DNA of 64,000 nucleotides. Source: Malacoraja senta (Eukaryota). Under the pieces are notes generated by a model. The model was not told where the DNA came from, made no database searches, and saw only the letters and a program-made list of their open reading frames with translations. Positions 3,645 through 63,323 of the stretch are shown piece by piece; within the stretch, counting starts at the first letter, position 1, and each line of letters opens with the position of its first letter. Where the stretch lies: positions 50,344,001-50,408,000 of the forward strand of contig CM075977.1 in assembly GCA_038087875.1 (NCBI GenBank), given 5' to 3'. The position numbers were made by a program, and so were the translations under genes.

Positions 3645-4520
3645 AGAGAAGAAGTTTATTTGCTCTTGCTCCCCCTCCCCCCATTTGCAACAAGGACAGA
3701 GTCCCCCTTGTACTCACTTTCCATCCCATCACTGTCGCATACAGCATGTAATCCTCCAACACTTTCGCCACCTCCAAAGGGATCCCAGTACTGGCCACAT
3801 CTTCCCATCTCCACCCTTTCTGCTTTCTGCAGAGACCGTTCCCTGTGTAACTCCCTGGGCAACTCGTCCCTTCCCACCCCGTCCCCAGGTACTTTCCCTT
3901 GCAACCGCAGGAGATGCAACACCTGTCCCCCCCCCCCCCCCCCCCGACTCCATCCAAGGACCCCAACAGTCTTTTCTGGTGAGGTAGAGGTTCACTTGCA
4001 CCTCCTCCAACCTCATCTACTGTATCCACTGTTCCAGGTGTCAACTTCTGTATATCGGCAAGAGCAAACGCAGGCTCGGCGATCGTTTTTGCTGAATATC
4101 TCCGCTCAGTCCGCGTTAACCCACCTGATCTCCCGGTTGCTCAACACTAACTCCCCCTCCCATTCCTAATCTGACGTTTCTGTCCTGGGCATCCTCCATT
4201 GTCAGAGTGAGGCCCAGTGCAAATTGGAGGAATAGCACATCATATTTTGCTTGGGTACCTTCCACCCCAGCGGTATGAACATTGACTTCTCTAACTTCAA
4301 ATAGCCCTTGCTTTCCCTTTCTCTCCATCCCCTCCCCCTTCACAGTTCTCCCATCAATCTTACTGTCTCTGACTACATTCTATCTCTGTCCCGCCCACTC
4401 CCCTGACATCAGTCTGAAAAAGGGTCTCGACCTGAAATGTCACCCATTCCTTCTCTCCAGAGATGCTGCCTGTCCCGCTGAGTTACTCAAGCATTTTGTG
4501 TCTACCTTTGATTTAGAACC
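3645..4520 (+). mobile_element. Penelope-like element 3' fragment (GIY-YIG endonuclease region plus terminal repeat)
   Basis: Frameshifted translation includes GTFPCNRRRCNTC and FTCTSSNLIYCIHCSRCQLLYIGKSKRRLGDRF (GIY-YIG-type YIG). Ends in the CTGA..AGGGTCTCGACCTGAAA terminal motif shared with many short repeats in the window. Confidence 0.85.
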
Positions 4521-20222: not shown

Positions 20223-21031
20223 CAATAGACAATAGGTGCAGGTGTAGGCCATTCGGCCCTTCGAGCCAGCACCACCATTCAATGCAATAATGGCTGATCA
20301 TCCACAATCAGTACCCCGTTCCTGCCTTCTCCCCATATCCCCTGACTCCGCTAGAGCCCTATCAAGCTCTCTCTTGAAAGTATCCAGAGAACCGGCCTCG
20401 CTCTGAGGCAGAGAATTCCACAGACTCACAACTCTCTGTGAAAAAGTGTTTTCTCATCTCCATTCCATATGCCTTACCCCTTATTCTTAAACTGGCCCCT
20501 GGTTCTGGACTCCCCCAACATCGGGAACATGTTTCCTGCCTCTAGCGTGTCCAATCCCTTAATACTCTTGTGTTTCAATAAGATCCTCTCTCCTCCTTCC
20601 AAACTCCAGAGTATACAAGCCCAGCCGCTCCATTCTCTCAGCATATGACAGTCCTGCCATCCTGGGAATTAACCTTGTGAACCTATGCTGCCTTCCTGTT
20701 TTTGCTACCAAAGTGGATAACCTCACATTTATCCACATTAAACTGCATCTGCCATGCATCTGCCCACTCACCCAACCTGTCCACTTCACCCTGCATCCTC
20801 ATAGCATCCTCCTCACAGTTCACACTGCCACCCAGTTTTGTGTCATCTGCAAATTTGCTAATGTTACTTTGAATCCCTTCATCTAAATCAATGATGTATA
20901 TTGTAAATAGCTGCGGTCCCAGCACCGAGCCTTGCGGTACCCCACTTGTCACTGCCTGCCTTTCTGAAAGGGACCCGTTAATCCCTACTCTTTGTTTCGT
21001 GTTTGCCAACCAATTTTCTATCCATGTCAGC
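20223..21031 (-). mobile_element. CR1-clade LINE fragment with internal deletion
   Basis: ORF 20683-21069 (SGVPQGSVLGPQLFTIYI...SKFADDTKLGG) is joined directly to the 3' end sequence. Confidence 0.9.
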
Positions 21032-30367: not shown

Positions 30368-30627
30368 AGTTTGGAAGGAAGGAATTGCAGATGCTAGTTT
30401 AAACCAAAGATAGACACGGGCCAGGCAACATCTCTTGAGAAAAGGAGTAGGCGACGTTTCGGGACGGGACCCTTCTTCAGGCTAAGACCCAGCCTGAACA
30501 ACGATCTCGACCCGAAACATCACCTATTTCTTTTCTCCAGAGATGCTGCCTGACCAGCTGAGTTAGTCCATCATTTTGTGTCTATCTTTGGTTTAAACTA
30601 GTATCTGCAATTCCTTCCTTCAAACTT
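30368..30627. mobile_element. Palindromic Penelope-terminus-derived element with hammerhead-like core on the minus strand
   Basis: Long inverted arms. 30453-30480 reads CTGAAGAAGGGTCCCGTCCCGAAACGTC on the minus strand. Confidence 0.75.
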
Positions 30628-33300: not shown

Positions 33301-35734
33301 GATACTTGGTCAGATACAAGGTGAACCAAGGGCTAAACCGCGCCAATCCCATAATGGATGAAGGGAGCATCTAAATATTGCTTCATAGCAATATTCTCAA
33401 CGCCAACACCCACGATATCTGTTGTACCTTTTTTGCTCCAGGTGTTTGTTAATCTTGTGTAAATTACAGCTGTTATAAGAAACTAGGATTTTTGAGATTA
33501 TGATCATTATCTGATTCAAAACATTTTCTCTTGTTAAAAGTTGGGTTAATGGGCATATCAAGCAACCTGTTGGATATTTAAAGAATCTTGCGTTGTCCTT
33601 CTGCAGACGAGCATTTCCTCATGTTTTTTTCCTCTTGGCTACAACCAAAATCTTTACTATATGAATATAAGATGGATGTTTGTATCTTACAGTGCTTGTA
33701 TTAATTGATCAAATTGTGTTAAGGTAGGGAGCTTTTGCATTTTTCAGCTTGAAATTGTGCAATCTGGTGCATACTGTAGCGAGTCTTTTAACTTGCATAT
33801 GAATGCAACATTTATGCTTTAAATTGGATTAGGTATGAATAAGGTTAGGCTAGATTACATTCCTAATTACATTCCACAATAGAGCCAGGCTCTGATCAAC
33901 AGGTGCAGCACATGAATGACTGTATTCATATATGGAAATCAGATTATATTCATGCTGTTATGTATATATATAGAGAGAAAAACTCGGAGAAACAAAACAA
34001 AAGTCGGACTTCCATCACTGTTCTGCACAAATAAATCAATCAACCTTGTTCAAGAAGGAACTACAGATGCTGGAGAATCGAAGTTAGACAAAATTGCTGG
34101 AGAAACTCAGCGGGTGCGGCAGCATCTATGGAGCGAAGGAAATAGGCAATGTTTCGGGCCGAAACCCTTCTTCAGACGGTTTCAACCTTACCCTTTGAAT
34201 ATAGAAACAAGACAGAAATAATGCCACATATTCAATCTTATATGGTTCAATGAAATTAAGATATATATGTAAAAATATATATGGAAACAGGCCCTTCCGC
34301 CCACAAAGTCCACACCGACCAGCAATCTATCATACACCAATTCCATCCATCACGCCAGGGACAATTTACAGAAGCCAATTAACCTACAAACCTGCACTTC
34401 TTTCGGATAGGGGAGAAACCGGAATATCCAGAGAAAACCCATGTGGTAGTAAGGCAGCAACTCTACCACTGCGCCACCGTGCCACCCCATTAAATTATTT
34501 TTTCTGTAATATATTTATTATGGTGTCACGTGAATAAAGATGAACACATGATTCTGATTTCTGCCCTTAATTGGATAACACACATGTCCAGTCATTGTGT
34601 TTTATGCCTGGTTTTCAACCTCTTCAGGCTGAAGGTCTTGACTCGAAACATCATCCATTCTTTCTCTCCAGAGATGCTGCCTGCCCTGCTGCGTTTTTCT
34701 AGTTTTTAGTGTCTATCTTCAGTTTAAACCAGCATCTGCAATTCCTTCCTACACTATTTGTTAAGCAAAACAGGTCCTATTCTCATTATATAATTTTGTG
34801 ATCAGCGTGAGAGCATGAGAATGTTGTGAAATGTGTGAGTCTCACGCTCAATGCGTGAGAGTTGGCAGCCCTGCTAATAATGCAAACATTTTATGCACGT
34901 TCCAATTGTTTGGACAAAAATCACTTATTACTGCTTTATAACAGTTAATTTACATTAAGACCATTTCAGAAATTATGGCAGTCAACAAAAAATCAACTGA
35001 CAAATTAAAGCAAACTAAAAAAAATAACATGTTCCCTTTCCTGACTCTACCTCATAAGTACTTTAACGCTGTTAACAGATCAAAGGGATATTAATCGCAA
35101 GAATCAAAATGGGGAAAGTGAGGGCAGTTTTGCTTAAATGGTCATTCTAAGCCCATTCAGATCTGCATAGAGTCAGAGTTATACAACATGTACATGGCTG
35201 GCCCAATTTGTCCATAATGATCAAGTTGGCATTCTGCGTGCCCAGGGACTGGCTGCCGTTCCCAGATCAGCTCGCTGCAGGGACTGGCTGCAGTTCTCAG
35301 GTCGGCTCGCCTGCCCCGACCCCGTGAAAACGAATTGGAAAAAAAAACTTGTTTTTTTCGGGTTACGGGCCGGATTCGGCCCGTGTGCCGTAGGTTGCCG
35401 AACCCTGTCCTAGATGATTGGCCTCATTGTGGTCCCCCCCCATGTTTTACAACCAATTCACCTGGTTAATTCTATCTCCGGCTGCTTCATGTTGTCGGCG
35501 GCTGCACATCCAACCAAGAAAGAAGAAAAGAGAAGAGATGCGATGTCACTCACAGCCACCAACTGACGCGCTTCCCCAGACTGCACAGATCGCTGTGATG
35601 TGGCGCAAAAGAGACAAACTGCAGGGACTGAAGACAGCGGGAGAATTCTGTCATCAGCGTAAGCATTGGCTGAAATGCGTGACTCTCACGCTCAAAGCGT
35701 GAGAGTTGGCTGCCCTGTCTAAGGCCAGGATGTG

Positions 35735-41445: not shown

Positions 41446-41545
41446 GTACTTGGGAAGTAGGATTAGGAATAAGATTTGATAAGCAACCCAATATGATTAA
41501 ATAAAGTTAAGCATAAAATAATGGAATTCAGGAGCTTATTAAAGT

Positions 41546-41573
41546 CTGAAGAAGGGTCTCGACCTGAAACGTC
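41546..41573 (+). ncRNA. Minimal hammerhead-ribozyme-like core in a Penelope-derived repeat
   Basis: CTGAAGA-AGG(GTCTCGA)CCT-GAAA-C-GTC fits the CUGANGA / stem II / GAAA / NUH layout with a minimal palindromic ACGT stem III. Activity not demonstrated. Confidence 0.55.
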
Positions 41574-41744
41574 ACCCATTCCCTCTCCAGAGATGCAGCC
41601 TGTCCCGCTGAGTTACTCCAGCATTTTGTCCAGCATATTCATCAAAGTGGTCACTGGCCATTAAGCTTGTAATCATAGTAAAATCTTCAAGTAAATCAAC
41701 CAAATAAGTGAGCGGCAGACAGTAACTTTCATCGGATCCAACAA

Positions 41745-55280: not shown

Positions 55281-55470
55281 ATAGACACAAAAAGCTGGAG
55301 TAACTCAGCGGTCCGACAGCATCTCTGGAGAAAAGGAATAGGTATGTTTCTGGTCTCGACCCGAAATGTCACCTATTCCTTCTCTCCAGAGATGCTGCCT
55401 GACCCGCTGAGTTACTCCAGCTTTTTGTGTCTATCTTCGGTTTAAACCAGCATCTGCATTTCCTTCCTAT
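55281..55470. mobile_element. Palindromic Penelope-terminus-derived element, ~15-bp TSD, inside an old Rex-like fragment
   Basis: Inverted arms. TSD ACAAT(G/T)AAAATGCAG at 55266-55280 and 55471-55485 (one mismatch). Confidence 0.8.
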
Positions 55471-56598: not shown

Positions 56599-56827
56599 AC
56601 TGAAGATAGACACAAAAAGCTGGAGTAACTCAGCGGGACAGGCAGCATCTCTGGAGAGAAAGAAATGGTGACTATTCAGGTCGAGACCCTCCAGGTCTGA
56701 AGAAGGGACTCGACCCGAAACAGCACCCATTCGTTCTTGCCAGAGATGCTGCCTGTCCCGCTGAGTTACTCCAGCTTTGTGTGTCTATCTTCAGTTTAAA
56801 CCAGCATCTGCAGTTCCTTCCTACACA
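56599..56827. mobile_element. Palindromic Penelope-terminus-derived element
   Basis: Near-perfect ~90-nt inverted arms. Central CTGAAGAAGGGACTCGACCCGAAAC at 56697-56721. Confidence 0.8.
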
Positions 56828-57628
56828 TTTGGCTTGACTATCTTTTTTCACTCGTGGCGCAGCAAGAAACAGTGTGGATAGCATCACTAAGCATACGTGG
56901 CTCTCTGCATGAGAATTATTTGTCTATTTTAATTCATATTGGATGTGTAGCCTACAAAAGGCGCGCATGTAAATACTTAAGTCAAAGCTAGTGTGGTCTC
57001 CCCTTAATTAATAGTAATTGCTCTAATATGTTTTCAGTTGGCAGCAGTCAAAAGATGTTGATTTGCCTTTATGTTCTAAATCCAAAGAAGCTTTGTTCTT
57101 GTATTTTTATCCCATAATTACCATGCATGAGAGTCAGAATTTTAATAAAAGCCTAAAGTTTTTAATTTTAAAGCCTTTTCTTATTTTAACCAATATTTGC
57201 TGAATAAGTTCACAAGACCAAATATATGAGATTGCATTCACATAACCTAGGAAAATGGTGCAAGAAGCACTGGATGATTTCCTTTGTTAGATCAACATGA
57301 AATGCTAAAAGAAAGGAATTCTTTTGTTTTGCAAGCATATTATAAAACAGTGCAGTGGGGGGGGGGGAGTGAAACTTTATTTTTTGCATCACATGCCGTG
57401 TTTATACTGAATACTGTAGTTGGAGGATTTTGAAAGCAATAAACATTAGTCATTGATATTTTACATGCATTGTGCCAGCCAATAGGGCAGCGATATTAGC
57501 TGGTCGATAATCAAACTGGGAAAAACAGATGCTATCCATTTTGCTCTTTATAACATTATTCACAGATGATGTTAAATGTCAATATTTTATCCTATGAATT
57601 TCTAAATTATTTGTATTTTTCTCTTTAG

Positions 57629-58095
57629 TGGTTCAACAGCTCCTTTCAGCACACTTTTATGGAGTTTGTGAGAAACAGCAGTGGCTATTGCCCAGCACAA
57701 CATAGCATCTTTGCAGACAAGTAAATCTAAGCAAGAACCTGAAGACTACCATTTTGGATTGACCATCAAGTTTAAAAAAAAGAATCCAAGTGATAAGAGA
57801 CTTGGCCTGTTCGGTATCACTAGTTGCATTCTAATTGTTTTGCAATGCATCTCCAAATGGGGTGACTGAACTGTTGAATGTTAGAAGCATTTGTAGTTTG
57901 AAGGAGAGCAAATAAGAAAAAACGGAAAAAGGGACTGATTTTATAAACAAAGTTTAAAGAATAATATTTTGTTCTTGTGCTACAATAAGAAACCTACAAT
58001 CGTATGAAGACAGCGCACATAGATTAAATTGGAGGTACTAAGATCATTTACAGACCTTGTGCTAAGATACTTCTGTGCCACCGGTTTCCAATCCA
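57629..58095 (+). other. Probable 5' UTR portion of the first coding exon of the PTP4A gene
   Basis: Strong acceptor ttgtatttttctctttAG at 57627-57628, followed by repeat-free sequence up to the ATG. Vertebrate PTP4A genes have a long 5' UTR in this exon. Confidence 0.7.
57659..57724 (+). promoter_or_regulatory. Upstream ORF, 21 aa (MEFVRNSSGYCPAQHSIFADK*)
   Basis: ATG at 57659 (context tttATGG, G at +4) to TAA at 57722-57724, 30 nt after the putative acceptor. Mammalian PRL mRNAs are known to have regulatory uORFs. Confidence 0.65.
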
Positions 58096-58200
58096 ATGGC
58101 TCGCATAAATCGCCCTGCACCCGTGGAAGTTTCTTACAAACACATGAGATTTCTCATTACACACAATCCAACAAATGCCACATTGGGTGCATTTGTAGAG
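58096..58200 (+). CDS. PTP4A/PRL-family phosphatase, first coding exon (aa 1-35)
   Basis: ATG at 58096 translates [35 protein letters not shown], the PRL N-terminus. 105 nt, followed by donor GTGAGT at 58201. Family is certain but the paralogue (PTP4A1/2/3 or other) is unresolved, so no symbol is given. Confidence 0.97.
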
Positions 58201-59840
58201 GTGAGTCTTGAAATGCTAAATATAAATGGGACTATTTGACAATTCTGCTTCTTTTGGTATAGATTTTAGTGCCTGCCATTTTGCATTTGAGTTATCTACG
58301 GGAGACTGTTAACATTTGTGAGGATTTTCTTGATTTGGAATCCTATACCTTAGTGGTAAAGATAGTAATGATTTACAAGAAGTTGATGCACTTTGAATTA
58401 TAGATGTTGCAATAATGAAATAATCTGACCCAAGTAGATTATTTAATTTACATGCTTGTCGACTTCCGTTTTGTCTTCAATAATTTATCAAACCTTAAAT
58501 GCACTTAACTTCAACCCAGGCACAAACTCTAGTAATACTACCATAGCCTTGTGAGCCATGTACATTTGTATAGGAAAAAGCTGCTGCTTTTTGTTTGTGT
58601 CTGTAAGTGACGTGAAGTATATGTTTTCAGGTTGGGCGCAACATTGAAACTGAGTTGATTTGAATTGGAAATAATAAAATGAGTGCCATCTACCTTATTT
58701 GATATTTTTATCTCGCCTTGGCTTTTTGGGCCTTAATTGTGGAAAATAAATAGGGAAGCTCTAAGTTTTCCATCTTGTCCTGCTTTTGCATAATTTTATA
58801 CAATGATTTTGCCTTCCCATTGTTATTTCACTTGTCAATAGCACCTTTGGGAATGATCAGAAATGTACGATCTACATAAATGTTGAAGATAATATAGCCA
58901 GTCAGGGATTGGATATTTGGTGGCCGGTAATTTGCCATGATGCCATAATGCCTGATTTTTCTTTTAGTATGTATATTTTTTAATTTAATTTTATTGCTAA
59001 TTTTGAGAATATCTGGACAGTGTCACATAATGTGAGCTTATTCAGTTAAAATTTAACAAGTTTGAAGATTGAGGCCTAAAGAGCAGAAATCTAATTGAAA
59101 TTCCAGAACTTGTCTGTGGACAGTTACTTGAAGGCATGGTTGTTGATGGAACAAAAGTCAGAGTCAAAATTAGAGGAGGTATTTGGAAGCTGGGAGCCAT
59201 GTGGTTCAAATATTGAAAGTATGAAATGAAGGGCAAATGTGTCCAAATATCAATGACACGAAGGTTTTGAATGTATTTAGTTCATGGAAGTTAAAATATC
59301 AGTGGATAAAATAGAAGTGATTCAGAATAGTCAAATCGTCATCCATCAGCAACTAATGGTCTGAGAAAATGGGAACAGGTGAGATGATGGAAATTTGAAC
59401 AAGCAGTGATGTTGAGAAGGCATATTTGAGGTCAAATAGTTCTTTCAGTTCTTTCCAGGTAATTACAGATTATATAAGTTGTATAGTAAATATGTAATCA
59501 TGTGGCTTAATTATTACCGGATGTGAATAAGCAATGCCCTTCCAATTTAACAAGAACAAACTTTTTGAGATATATTCTTGTATCATGCACCAGCAATGGC
59601 CAAATCGCGTTTGCAGATTTATTGACTTCTATTTTGTGGGTGAGAATAAAATTCAAAATGGTTTTGCTATTTTTAATATTAAAAATACTAATACCACCAT
59701 TCTCTTAATTTGAATTCATTTTTTTAGTTCATAACCCACAACATAAAACAATAAACTGTAGATTGCATGTCTCATTCATCTCCCAGAATGTCTTCATCAG
59801 CAATAATTCTTAAATAGTTACTCATGTTTTCTTCTCTTAG

Positions 59841-59933
59841 GAGCTAAAGAAGTATGGTGTAACAACTCTTGTGAGAGTATGTGATACCACGTATGATAAG
59901 AAGCCAGTGGAGAATGAGAGTATTGAAGTAATA
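59841..59933 (+). CDS. PTP4A/PRL-family phosphatase, second coding exon (aa 36-66)
   Basis: Acceptor ttttcttctcttag, 93 nt phase 0 encoding [31 protein letters not shown] (includes Cys49), donor GTAAGT at 59934. Confidence 0.97.
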
Positions 59934-63192: not shown

Positions 63193-63323
63193 GATTGGCC
63201 ATTTGATGATGGTGATCCACCTCCAAGCAAAATTGTGGATGATTGGCTAACTTTACTTAAAACTAAGTTTTCGGAACAACCTGGAAGCTGTGTAGCAGTC
63301 CATTGTGTTGCTGGCCTTGGGCG
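63193..63323 (+). CDS. PTP4A/PRL-family phosphatase, third coding exon (aa 67-110, WPFDD loop and P-loop)
   Basis: Acceptor cctttttaag, 131 nt encoding [43 protein letters not shown](R), donor GTAGGT at 63324. HCVAGLGR is the PRL CX5R motif. Remaining exons lie beyond the window. Confidence 0.97.

What the first reader, a model, noticed from the sequence alone, without database searches (positions are those of the whole stretch)
57659..57724. 21-codon uORF at the start of the PTP4A leader exon: candidate Mg2+-responsive translational switch
Seen: ATG-initiated MEFVRNSSGYCPAQHSIFADK* lies just inside a strong acceptor, about 370 nt upstream of the main ATG, in repeat-free sequence. It is below the ORF-track size cut-off. 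Established: mammalian PRL-1/PRL-2 translation is controlled by a conserved magnesium-sensitive uORF, and PRLs bind CNNM magnesium transporters. Inference: this may be the homologous uORF, which would date the circuit to the jawed-vertebrate ancestor. I cannot confirm peptide homology from memory.
Basis: partly seen in the sequence, partly recalled or inferred. Interest (0 to 1): 0.7.

Follow-up and report, generated by a model that had tools for sequence, protein, structure and literature searches.

The report
Conserved PTP4A upstream ORF in a skate
The 21-codon reading frame is real, lies in the mature mRNA of a skate PTP4A3 gene, and matches the small upstream reading frame that controls PRL phosphatase synthesis in mammals; this is a known kind of switch, shown here to be shared by all three gene copies and by lampreys.

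Summary
Observation confirmed and homology supported; Mg2+ control was not testable.

- **The ORF and its mRNA.** ATG 57659 to TAA 57724 encodes the stated 21-residue peptide. mRNA contigs of a close relative (little skate, about 98.6% identical) start at the predicted acceptor (57628/57629), run through the uORF to the main ATG (58096), then splice to 59841 and 63193.
- **Chance versus conservation.** An ORF this long is expected by chance in the AT-rich leader (75% of shuffles). The evidence is conservation. Homologous frames sit at the same place (acceptor, 30 nt, ATG) in bamboo-shark PTP4A3-like (20/21 identical), shark, mouse and zebrafish PTP4A1, deer-mouse PTP4A2 and a lamprey PTP4A2-like gene, all 21 codons. 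A bona fide PTP4A3 mRNA has 19 codons. M1, C11, A13, Q14 and H15 are invariant.
- **Selection.** Between paralogues only this stretch of the leader aligns, with dN/dS 0.14-0.32. No RNA structure or Rfam family was found.
- **Corrections.** In the relative's mRNA an in-frame AUG in an upstream exon, outside the window, gives a 37-codon uORF, as in PTP4A1. The origin is at least the vertebrate ancestor.
- **Extra.** A conserved AUG-GGG-stop mini-uORF lies 92-161 nt downstream.

This is a new member of a known kind. I found no earlier scan note of this uORF.

The parts
57600..57628 (+). 3' end of the long first intron: pyrimidine tract and AG acceptor
   Evidence: The mRNA contigs that reach the exon's 5' end switch from upstream-exon sequence to window sequence exactly at 57629. 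Intron sequence is unalignable with bamboo shark (48% identity).
57629..58200 (+). Leader plus first coding exon (second exon of the mRNA)
   Evidence: Contiguous in 15 mRNA contigs of a close relative at 98.4-98.8% identity; donor GTGAGT at 58201.
57629..57658 (+). Ten in-frame codons before the internal Met. They form part of a 37-codon uORF if the exon-1 AUG is used.
   Evidence: In the relative's mRNA an AUG 18 nt before the exon-1 donor reads in frame into these codons. The same 6+10+21 codon layout is seen in PTP4A1 of zebrafish and bamboo shark. 30/30 nt identical to bamboo shark. Between paralogues only the last two codons (T, F) are shared.
57659..57724 (+). Core 21-codon conserved-peptide uORF with its stop (the finding)
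   Evidence: for the ORF. 20/21 residues identical to the bamboo shark orthologue. Significant ungapped similarity to PTP4A1, PTP4A2, PTP4A3 and lamprey uORFs. Paralogue dN/dS 0.14-0.32.
57857..57865 (+). Mini-uORF AUG GGG UGA (nested in the 6-codon ORF 57845-57865)
   Evidence: AUG-GGG-stop lies 92-161 nt after the core uORF stop in skate, little skate, bamboo shark PTP4A3-like and PTP4A1, mouse-genus PTP4A1, a bona fide PTP4A3 mRNA and lamprey PTP4A2-like. It is absent from deer-mouse PTP4A2. The motif is rare, with 1-5 plus-strand hits per locus.
58004..58027 (+). 7-codon uORF whose start and stop, but not its peptide, are kept in bamboo shark
   Evidence: Window MKTAHID* versus shark MKTVRMY* at the aligned position. 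Not seen in the paralogues.
58096..58200 (+). Main ORF start: PTP4A3-type phosphatase, coding exon 1
   Evidence: Translation and alignment to PTP4A proteins.
59841..59933 (+). Coding exon 2
63193..63323 (+). Coding exon 3 (the rest of the CDS lies beyond the window)

Best explanation
The ORF at 57659-57724 is the conserved core of the PTP4A-family conserved-peptide upstream ORF, here in the leader of a skate PTP4A3-lineage gene. Shown: it lies in the mature mRNA, at a fixed position 30 nt inside the second exon. Its length, start, stop and a C-x-A-Q-H centred peptide are kept across PTP4A1, PTP4A2, PTP4A3 and lamprey genes, and selection acts on the peptide rather than on an RNA fold. Inferred from mammalian PRL-1/2 work: scanning ribosomes start at the exon-1 AUG (37 codons) or, by leaky scanning, at the internal AUG (21 codons); both have a U at -3. 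The nascent peptide then slows or stalls the ribosome near the uORF end. This limits how many ribosomes reach the main AUG 371 nt downstream, and the block is relieved when intracellular Mg2+ falls. The conserved AUG-GGG-stop mini-uORF about 130 nt further on probably acts as a second gate for re-initiating ribosomes; that step is my inference only.
For: - mRNA inclusion and splice site.
- Skate-shark orthologue conservation: uORF part 94/96 nt, against 71% for the rest of the leader, 87% for the CDS and 48% for the intron. Synonymous divergence is 0.067 in the uORF against 0.376 in the CDS (Fisher p = 0.03).
- Same architecture (acceptor + 30 nt + ATG + 21 codons + stop) in PTP4A1 of shark, mouse-genus and zebrafish, PTP4A2 of deer mouse, and lamprey PTP4A2-like.
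- Similarity statistics: permutation p < 5e-6 for every comparison. In each locus except L017 (lamprey PTP4A1), the single best tblastn hit is the leader site, with E from 6e-20 to 4e-5 against at least 0.15 for the next hit.
- Between paralogues only the uORF stretch of the leader aligns, with pN 0.20-0.27 against pS 0.5-0.8.
- No stable or covarying RNA structure and no Rfam family.
- Literature: the PRL-1/2 uORF is evolutionarily conserved and magnesium-sensitive, and scrambling its coding sequence abolishes the response (PMC11855589; PMC10083557). A frameshift in the PTP4A1 conserved-peptide uORF derepresses a reporter (PMC7530721). The uORFs of the PTP4A1 leader are translated in human cells (PMC4383229). 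The Ptp4a1 uORF peptide is conserved from human to fish (PMC3914846).
Against: - There is no translation, reporter or magnesium data for any chondrichthyan or for any PTP4A3 gene. The mammalian experiments concern PRL-1 and PRL-2 only.
- The primary paper (Hardy 2019) was not available. That the uORF I traced is the tested one rests on it being the only conserved peptide uORF in these leaders.
- Exon 1 of this species is outside the window, so the 37-codon form is shown only in the relative.
- The skate peptide has P where most others have Q at position 12.
- Very low synonymous change between skate and shark hints at an extra nucleotide-level constraint that I cannot explain.
Confidence: 0.85

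Rival explanations
1. Homologous uORF, but in the PTP4A3 lineage or in skates it is a constitutive brake, or it responds to another signal (for example eIF2 phosphorylation), and not to magnesium.
For: Mg2+ experiments cover only PRL-1/2. The PTP4A1 leader also confers resistance to eIF2 inhibition. The PTP4A3 versions are the most divergent: 19 codons in L013, and P12 in elasmobranchs.
Against: The invariant C-x-A-Q-H core and the C-terminal half are retained; the window's C-terminal half is almost identical to mammalian PTP4A2. Skate-shark conservation is stronger than that of the CDS.
Confidence: 0.3
2. The conserved thing is a nucleotide element of a hyperconserved leader (RNA structure, protein-binding site or internal promoter), and the open frame is incidental.
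For: Synonymous sites are almost frozen between skate and shark. The mouse Ptp4a1 leader is listed among hyperconserved leaders with internal transcription starts (PMC9456764).
Against: Between paralogues synonymous sites are saturated while the peptide, the frame, the start and the stop are kept. The fold is no better than shuffles (z 0.61), and the alignment fold has no compensatory pair. There is no Rfam hit. Frameshift mutants derepress in mammals.
Confidence: 0.05
3. The peptide is a stable micropeptide with a function of its own in trans.
For: Strong peptide-level conservation over more than 450 million years.
Against: Nothing here tests it. Its fixed position upstream of every PTP4A paralogue, and the cis effects reported in mammals, fit a cis-acting nascent peptide.
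Confidence: 0.05
4. Chance ORF in an AT-rich leader.
For: 75% of shuffled leaders hold an ORF of this size.
Against: All the conservation evidence.
Confidence: 0.01

Closest known systems
Magnesium-sensitive conserved uORF of mammalian PRL-1/PRL-2 (PTP4A1/PTP4A2) mRNAs (Hardy et al. 2019, cited in PMC11855589 and PMC10083557; the PTP4A1 conserved-peptide uORF of PMC7530721; the Ptp4a1 uORF peptide of PMC3914846)
   Same: Homologous peptide, same 21-codon core, same stop, same place 30 nt inside the exon that carries the main AUG, and the same two-exon 37-codon layout as PTP4A1.
   Different: It sits on the PTP4A3-lineage gene of a cartilaginous fish. It has P instead of Q at position 12 and a different exon-1 part (MNRRRA in the relative against MSKHIP). 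No functional data.
TRPM7 leader uORFs (Mg2+-sensitive, PMC4227784)
   Same: A vertebrate magnesium-homeostasis gene whose translation is set by conserved uORFs.
   Different: No sequence relationship was looked for or seen. The proposed mechanism there is competition between uORFs and the main ORF, not a conserved stalling peptide.
Bacterial Mg2+-sensing leader ORFs and riboswitches of mgtA/mgtCBR (from my own knowledge; the analogy is also drawn in PMC10083557)
   Same: A short leader ORF couples magnesium status to expression of a magnesium-homeostasis gene.
   Different: Unrelated sequence, with a transcription-attenuation logic. Analogy only.
Minimal AUG-stop or two-codon uORFs such as plant NIP5;1 (from my own knowledge)
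   Same: The conserved AUG-GGG-stop at 57857-57865 is of this minimal type.
   Different: It has one sense codon after the AUG. No function is known and nothing was tested here.

Membership tests
PTP4A conserved-peptide uORF | Lies in the 5' leader of a PTP4A mRNA, upstream of the main AUG, in mature transcripts | tested here: met
   mRNA contigs of a close relative cover 57629-58200 and splice onward.
PTP4A conserved-peptide uORF | Peptide homologous to the mammalian PTP4A1/PTP4A2 uORF | tested here: met
   12/21 and 10/21 identities without gaps, permutation p < 5e-6, tblastn E 1.6e-9 and 2.5e-6.
PTP4A conserved-peptide uORF | Same gene-structure position and length | tested here: met
   Acceptor + 30 nt + ATG + 21 codons + stop in seven loci.
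PTP4A conserved-peptide uORF | Purifying selection on the encoded peptide | tested here: met
   Paralogue dN/dS 0.14-0.32 on the core. Orthologue pairs have too few changes to estimate it well.
PTP4A conserved-peptide uORF | Translated (ribosome footprints) | not testable with these tools
PTP4A conserved-peptide uORF | Sequence-dependent repression of the main ORF | not testable with these tools
   Known for human PTP4A1 only (PMC7530721).
PTP4A conserved-peptide uORF | Relief of repression at low intracellular Mg2+ | not testable with these tools
   Known for human PRL-1/2 only.
PTP4A3 orthologue group (host gene) | Groups with PTP4A3 of bony vertebrates in a protein tree | tested here: met
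   Elasmobranch 'PTP4A3-like' proteins are sister to osteichthyan PTP4A3 with support 100/97. The tree has 34 rows, 169 columns and a midpoint root only.

The most novel reading that the evidence does not exclude
The uORF is older than the duplications that produced PTP4A1, 2 and 3. It is present in lampreys, and in most lineages it is paired with a second conserved element, an AUG-GGG-stop mini-uORF about 90-160 nt downstream. On this reading the ancestral vertebrate PRL gene already carried a two-part translational switch, and PRL-3 outside mammals is also under magnesium control.
Probability: 0.35. Interest if true: 0.55.

Novelty: new member of a known kind. Interest (0 to 1): 0.4.

Why it matters
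PRL phosphatases bind CNNM magnesium transport regulators and are oncogenes, and their synthesis is set by a small upstream reading frame. Finding the same frame in a cartilaginous-fish PTP4A3 gene and in lampreys, with five invariant residues (M1, C11, A13, Q14, H15), does three things. It narrows the functional core of the peptide. It shows the control element predates the split of the three paralogues. It suggests PRL-3, the paralogue most tied to metastasis, may have been under the same control ancestrally. It also flags gene models that wrongly fuse the uORF, or the mini-uORF, to the phosphatase coding sequence.

Tried and rejected
- The primary paper (Hardy 2019) could not be read by DOI or PMC id. 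The conserved-uORF survey (PMC7530721) has no supplements held. A full-text search for the peptide found nothing.
- The upstream exon seen in the relative's mRNA has no match in the window.
- RNA structure and Rfam gave nothing.
- A first look at one lamprey mRNA contig found no homologue. That contig starts just 3' of a truncated copy, which I found later in the genome.
- The ORF's length alone as evidence was rejected.

Full report
**1. What is in the window.**
A PTP4A-type coding sequence starts at 58096. Its exons are 58096-58200, 59841-59933 and 63193-63323, and the rest lies beyond the window. The stretch 57629-58095 is 37% GC and holds five upstream ATGs. In 2000 shuffles of this stretch, 75% contain an ATG ORF of 21 codons or more. 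The ORF's existence alone therefore means nothing.

**2. Is it in the mRNA?**
I found a full-length relative of the protein. Its exact sequence (P0184, and the variant P0349) is encoded on many Logan RNA-seq contigs.
- The core of these proteins equals the little skate protein P0339. The contigs are therefore little skate mRNAs, and the window comes from a related skate (98.4-98.8% identity).
- Thirteen of the 15 contigs begin their match at exactly 57629; L003 and L004 start inside the exon. All run without interruption to 58200, then join 59841-59933 and 63193-63323.
- Thirteen contigs carry 2-153 nt of a further upstream exon (about 124 nt once adaptor letters on the longest contigs are discounted) that has no match anywhere in the window. 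The first intron is thus longer than 57.6 kb. This fits the 154-kb and 179-kb gene ranges of the two catshark orthologues.

**3. The uORF is probably longer than the window shows.**
In the relative's mRNA, the first AUG after the 5' end lies 18 nt before the exon-1 donor and is in frame with 57629 onward. This gives a 37-codon uORF: 6 codons in exon 1, 10 codons at 57629-57658, then the 21 codons of the finding. Both AUGs have U at -3, so leaky scanning to the internal one is plausible; that is inference.

**4. Orthologue.**
The bamboo shark PTP4A3-like locus (L027) has the same acceptor, the same 10 codons and the same 21 codons. There is one amino-acid change (A19S) and one synonymous change. 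Identity over the aligned regions:

| Region | Skate-shark nt identity |
|---|---|
| Exon-2 part of the uORF | 94/96 (98%) |
| Rest of the leader | 71% |
| Coding exons 1-3 | 87% |
| Intron | 48% |

Synonymous divergence is 0.067 in the uORF against 0.376 in the coding sequence (1 of 15 sites against 27.5 of 73; Fisher p = 0.03). The uORF is thus better kept than the phosphatase itself.

**5. Paralogues, mammals and lamprey.**
A mis-predicted bamboo shark PTP4A1 protein (P0159) first showed a near-copy of the peptide in its N-terminal extension. Reading the loci gave one architecture everywhere: acceptor, 30 nt, ATG, 21 codons, stop.

| Locus | Gene | uORF core |
|---|---|---|
| L010 | Bamboo shark PTP4A1 | 21 codons |
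| L029 | Mouse-genus PTP4A1 | MEFLKGSGDYCQAQHDLYADK |
| L011 | Zebrafish ptp4a1 mRNA | 37-codon form read from spliced RNA |
| L028 | Deer-mouse PTP4A2 | MAILSVRADFCQAQHSVFADK |
| L030 | Brook lamprey PTP4A2-like | MEFVKGRGEYCQAQHEVFADK; main ATG 376 nt after the uATG |
| L013 | Bona fide PTP4A3 mRNA (protein cluster of birds, frogs, turtles, basal ray-finned fishes) | 19-codon version starting at the same Met |
| L017, L019 | Second lamprey paralogue | Truncated 16-codon copy |

- M1, C11, A13, Q14 and H15 are invariant.
- Ungapped BLOSUM62 scores of the window peptide against each of six of these (the two lamprey copies were not permuted) lie 7.5 or more standard deviations above permuted peptides. 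None of 200,000 permutations reached them.
- In every locus but L017, the single best tblastn hit of the window's 31 residues is this site. E ranges from 6e-20 to 4e-5, against 0.15 or worse for the runner-up.

**6. Peptide or nucleotide constraint?**
Between paralogues the rest of the leader does not align. On the 21 codons, synonymous differences are near saturation (pS 0.5-0.8) while non-synonymous ones are 0.20-0.27, giving dN/dS 0.14-0.32. The 10 codons before the Met are conserved only within each orthologue group. The RNA folds no better than shuffles (z 0.61). The alignment fold is -0.9 kcal/mol with no compensatory pair. Rfam finds nothing. The shared constraint is therefore on the peptide, its start and its stop. 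The very low synonymous change within the PTP4A3 lineage remains unexplained.

**7. Link to the known switch.**
- I could not read Hardy et al. 2019.
- A review states that the PRL 5' leader holds a small uORF thought to stall ribosomes at normal magnesium. Rearranging its coding sequence, with start and stop kept, abolishes magnesium sensitivity (PMC11855589).
- The same group calls it evolutionarily conserved and uses the PRL-2 leader as a magnesium reporter (PMC10083557).
- A survey of conserved-peptide uORFs used the PTP4A1 one as a positive control and saw derepression on frameshift (PMC7530721).
- An earlier tool paper showed the Ptp4a1 uORF peptide conserved from human to fish (PMC3914846).
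- Ribosome profiling showed translated uORFs on the PTP4A1 leader (PMC4383229).
- The frame I traced is the only peptide-conserved uORF in these leaders, so I take it to be that element. This is a well-founded inference, not a direct reading.

**8. Host gene.**
In a 34-protein tree the elasmobranch PTP4A3-like proteins are sister to PTP4A3 of bony vertebrates with support 100/97. The simplest reading is orthology to PTP4A3 rather than a fourth paralogue. The tree is short (169 columns) and midpoint-rooted.

**9. A second conserved element.**
AUG-GGG-stop (57857-57865) recurs 92-161 nt after the core uORF stop. It is present in both skates, bamboo shark PTP4A3-like and PTP4A1, mouse-genus PTP4A1, the bona fide PTP4A3 mRNA and lamprey PTP4A2-like. 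It is absent from deer-mouse PTP4A2. In zebrafish the stop is lost and the frame runs into the main ORF. The motif occurs only 1-5 times on the plus strand of each 1.7-64-kb sequence. I did not follow it further.

**10. Verdict.**
The element is at least as old as the vertebrate ancestor. It is a further member of a described class, so novelty is modest. The mechanism (cis-acting nascent-peptide brake relieved at low Mg2+) is carried over from mammals and is untested here.

Noticed in passing
window 57857-57865; L027:4774-4782; L010:20794-20802; L029:2719-2727; L013:339-347; L030:5828-5836: A two-codon uORF, AUG GGG stop, is kept 92-161 nt downstream of the core uORF in PTP4A3, PTP4A1 and lamprey leaders, but not in deer-mouse PTP4A2. 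In zebrafish its stop is lost and it becomes an in-frame N-terminal extension of the annotated 184-residue protein.
   Followed up: partly
window 58004-58027 and L027:4909-4932: A 7-codon uORF keeps its start and stop positions between skate and bamboo shark while the peptide differs (MKTAHID against MKTVRMY).
   Followed up: no
upstream of window position 1 (exon 1 not in window); L005:1-105, L023:1-153: The first exon of the gene, about 124 nt in the little skate mRNA, has no match in the window, so intron 1 exceeds 57.6 kb. The catshark orthologues span 154 and 179 kb.
   Followed up: partly
P0159 (bamboo shark PTP4A1 gene model), L010:10001 and 20607-20702: The public gene model fuses the uORF (MSKHIP from exon 1 plus the exon-2 part) to the phosphatase through an invented intron. 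This annotation error is what first revealed the homology.
   Followed up: yes
window 58105-58107 (codon 4): The window and bamboo shark read MARI at the N-terminus, where little skate, thorny skate and most vertebrates read MARM (A against G at 58107).
   Followed up: no
P0339, P0340, P0195, P0319 (C-terminus, beyond the window): Elasmobranch PTP4A3-like proteins end in CAIV instead of the CCIM, CCVM or CCIQ prenylation box of other PRLs.
   Followed up: no
L001:2874-2928 against window 4411-4468, 30430-30544, 34634-34675, 41543-41594, 55352-55393, 56695-56747: The 3' end of the little skate mRNA contigs matches a short element repeated at least six times in the window at 78-88% identity. One copy lies inside the retroelement family noted by the scan at 56599-56827.
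   Followed up: no
L017:5189-5239, L019:5196-5246: The second lamprey paralogue (annotated PTP4A1) holds a truncated 16-codon version of the uORF ending right after the C-Q-A-Q-H motif. Its leader is contiguous with the ATG exon over at least 730 nt.
   Followed up: partly
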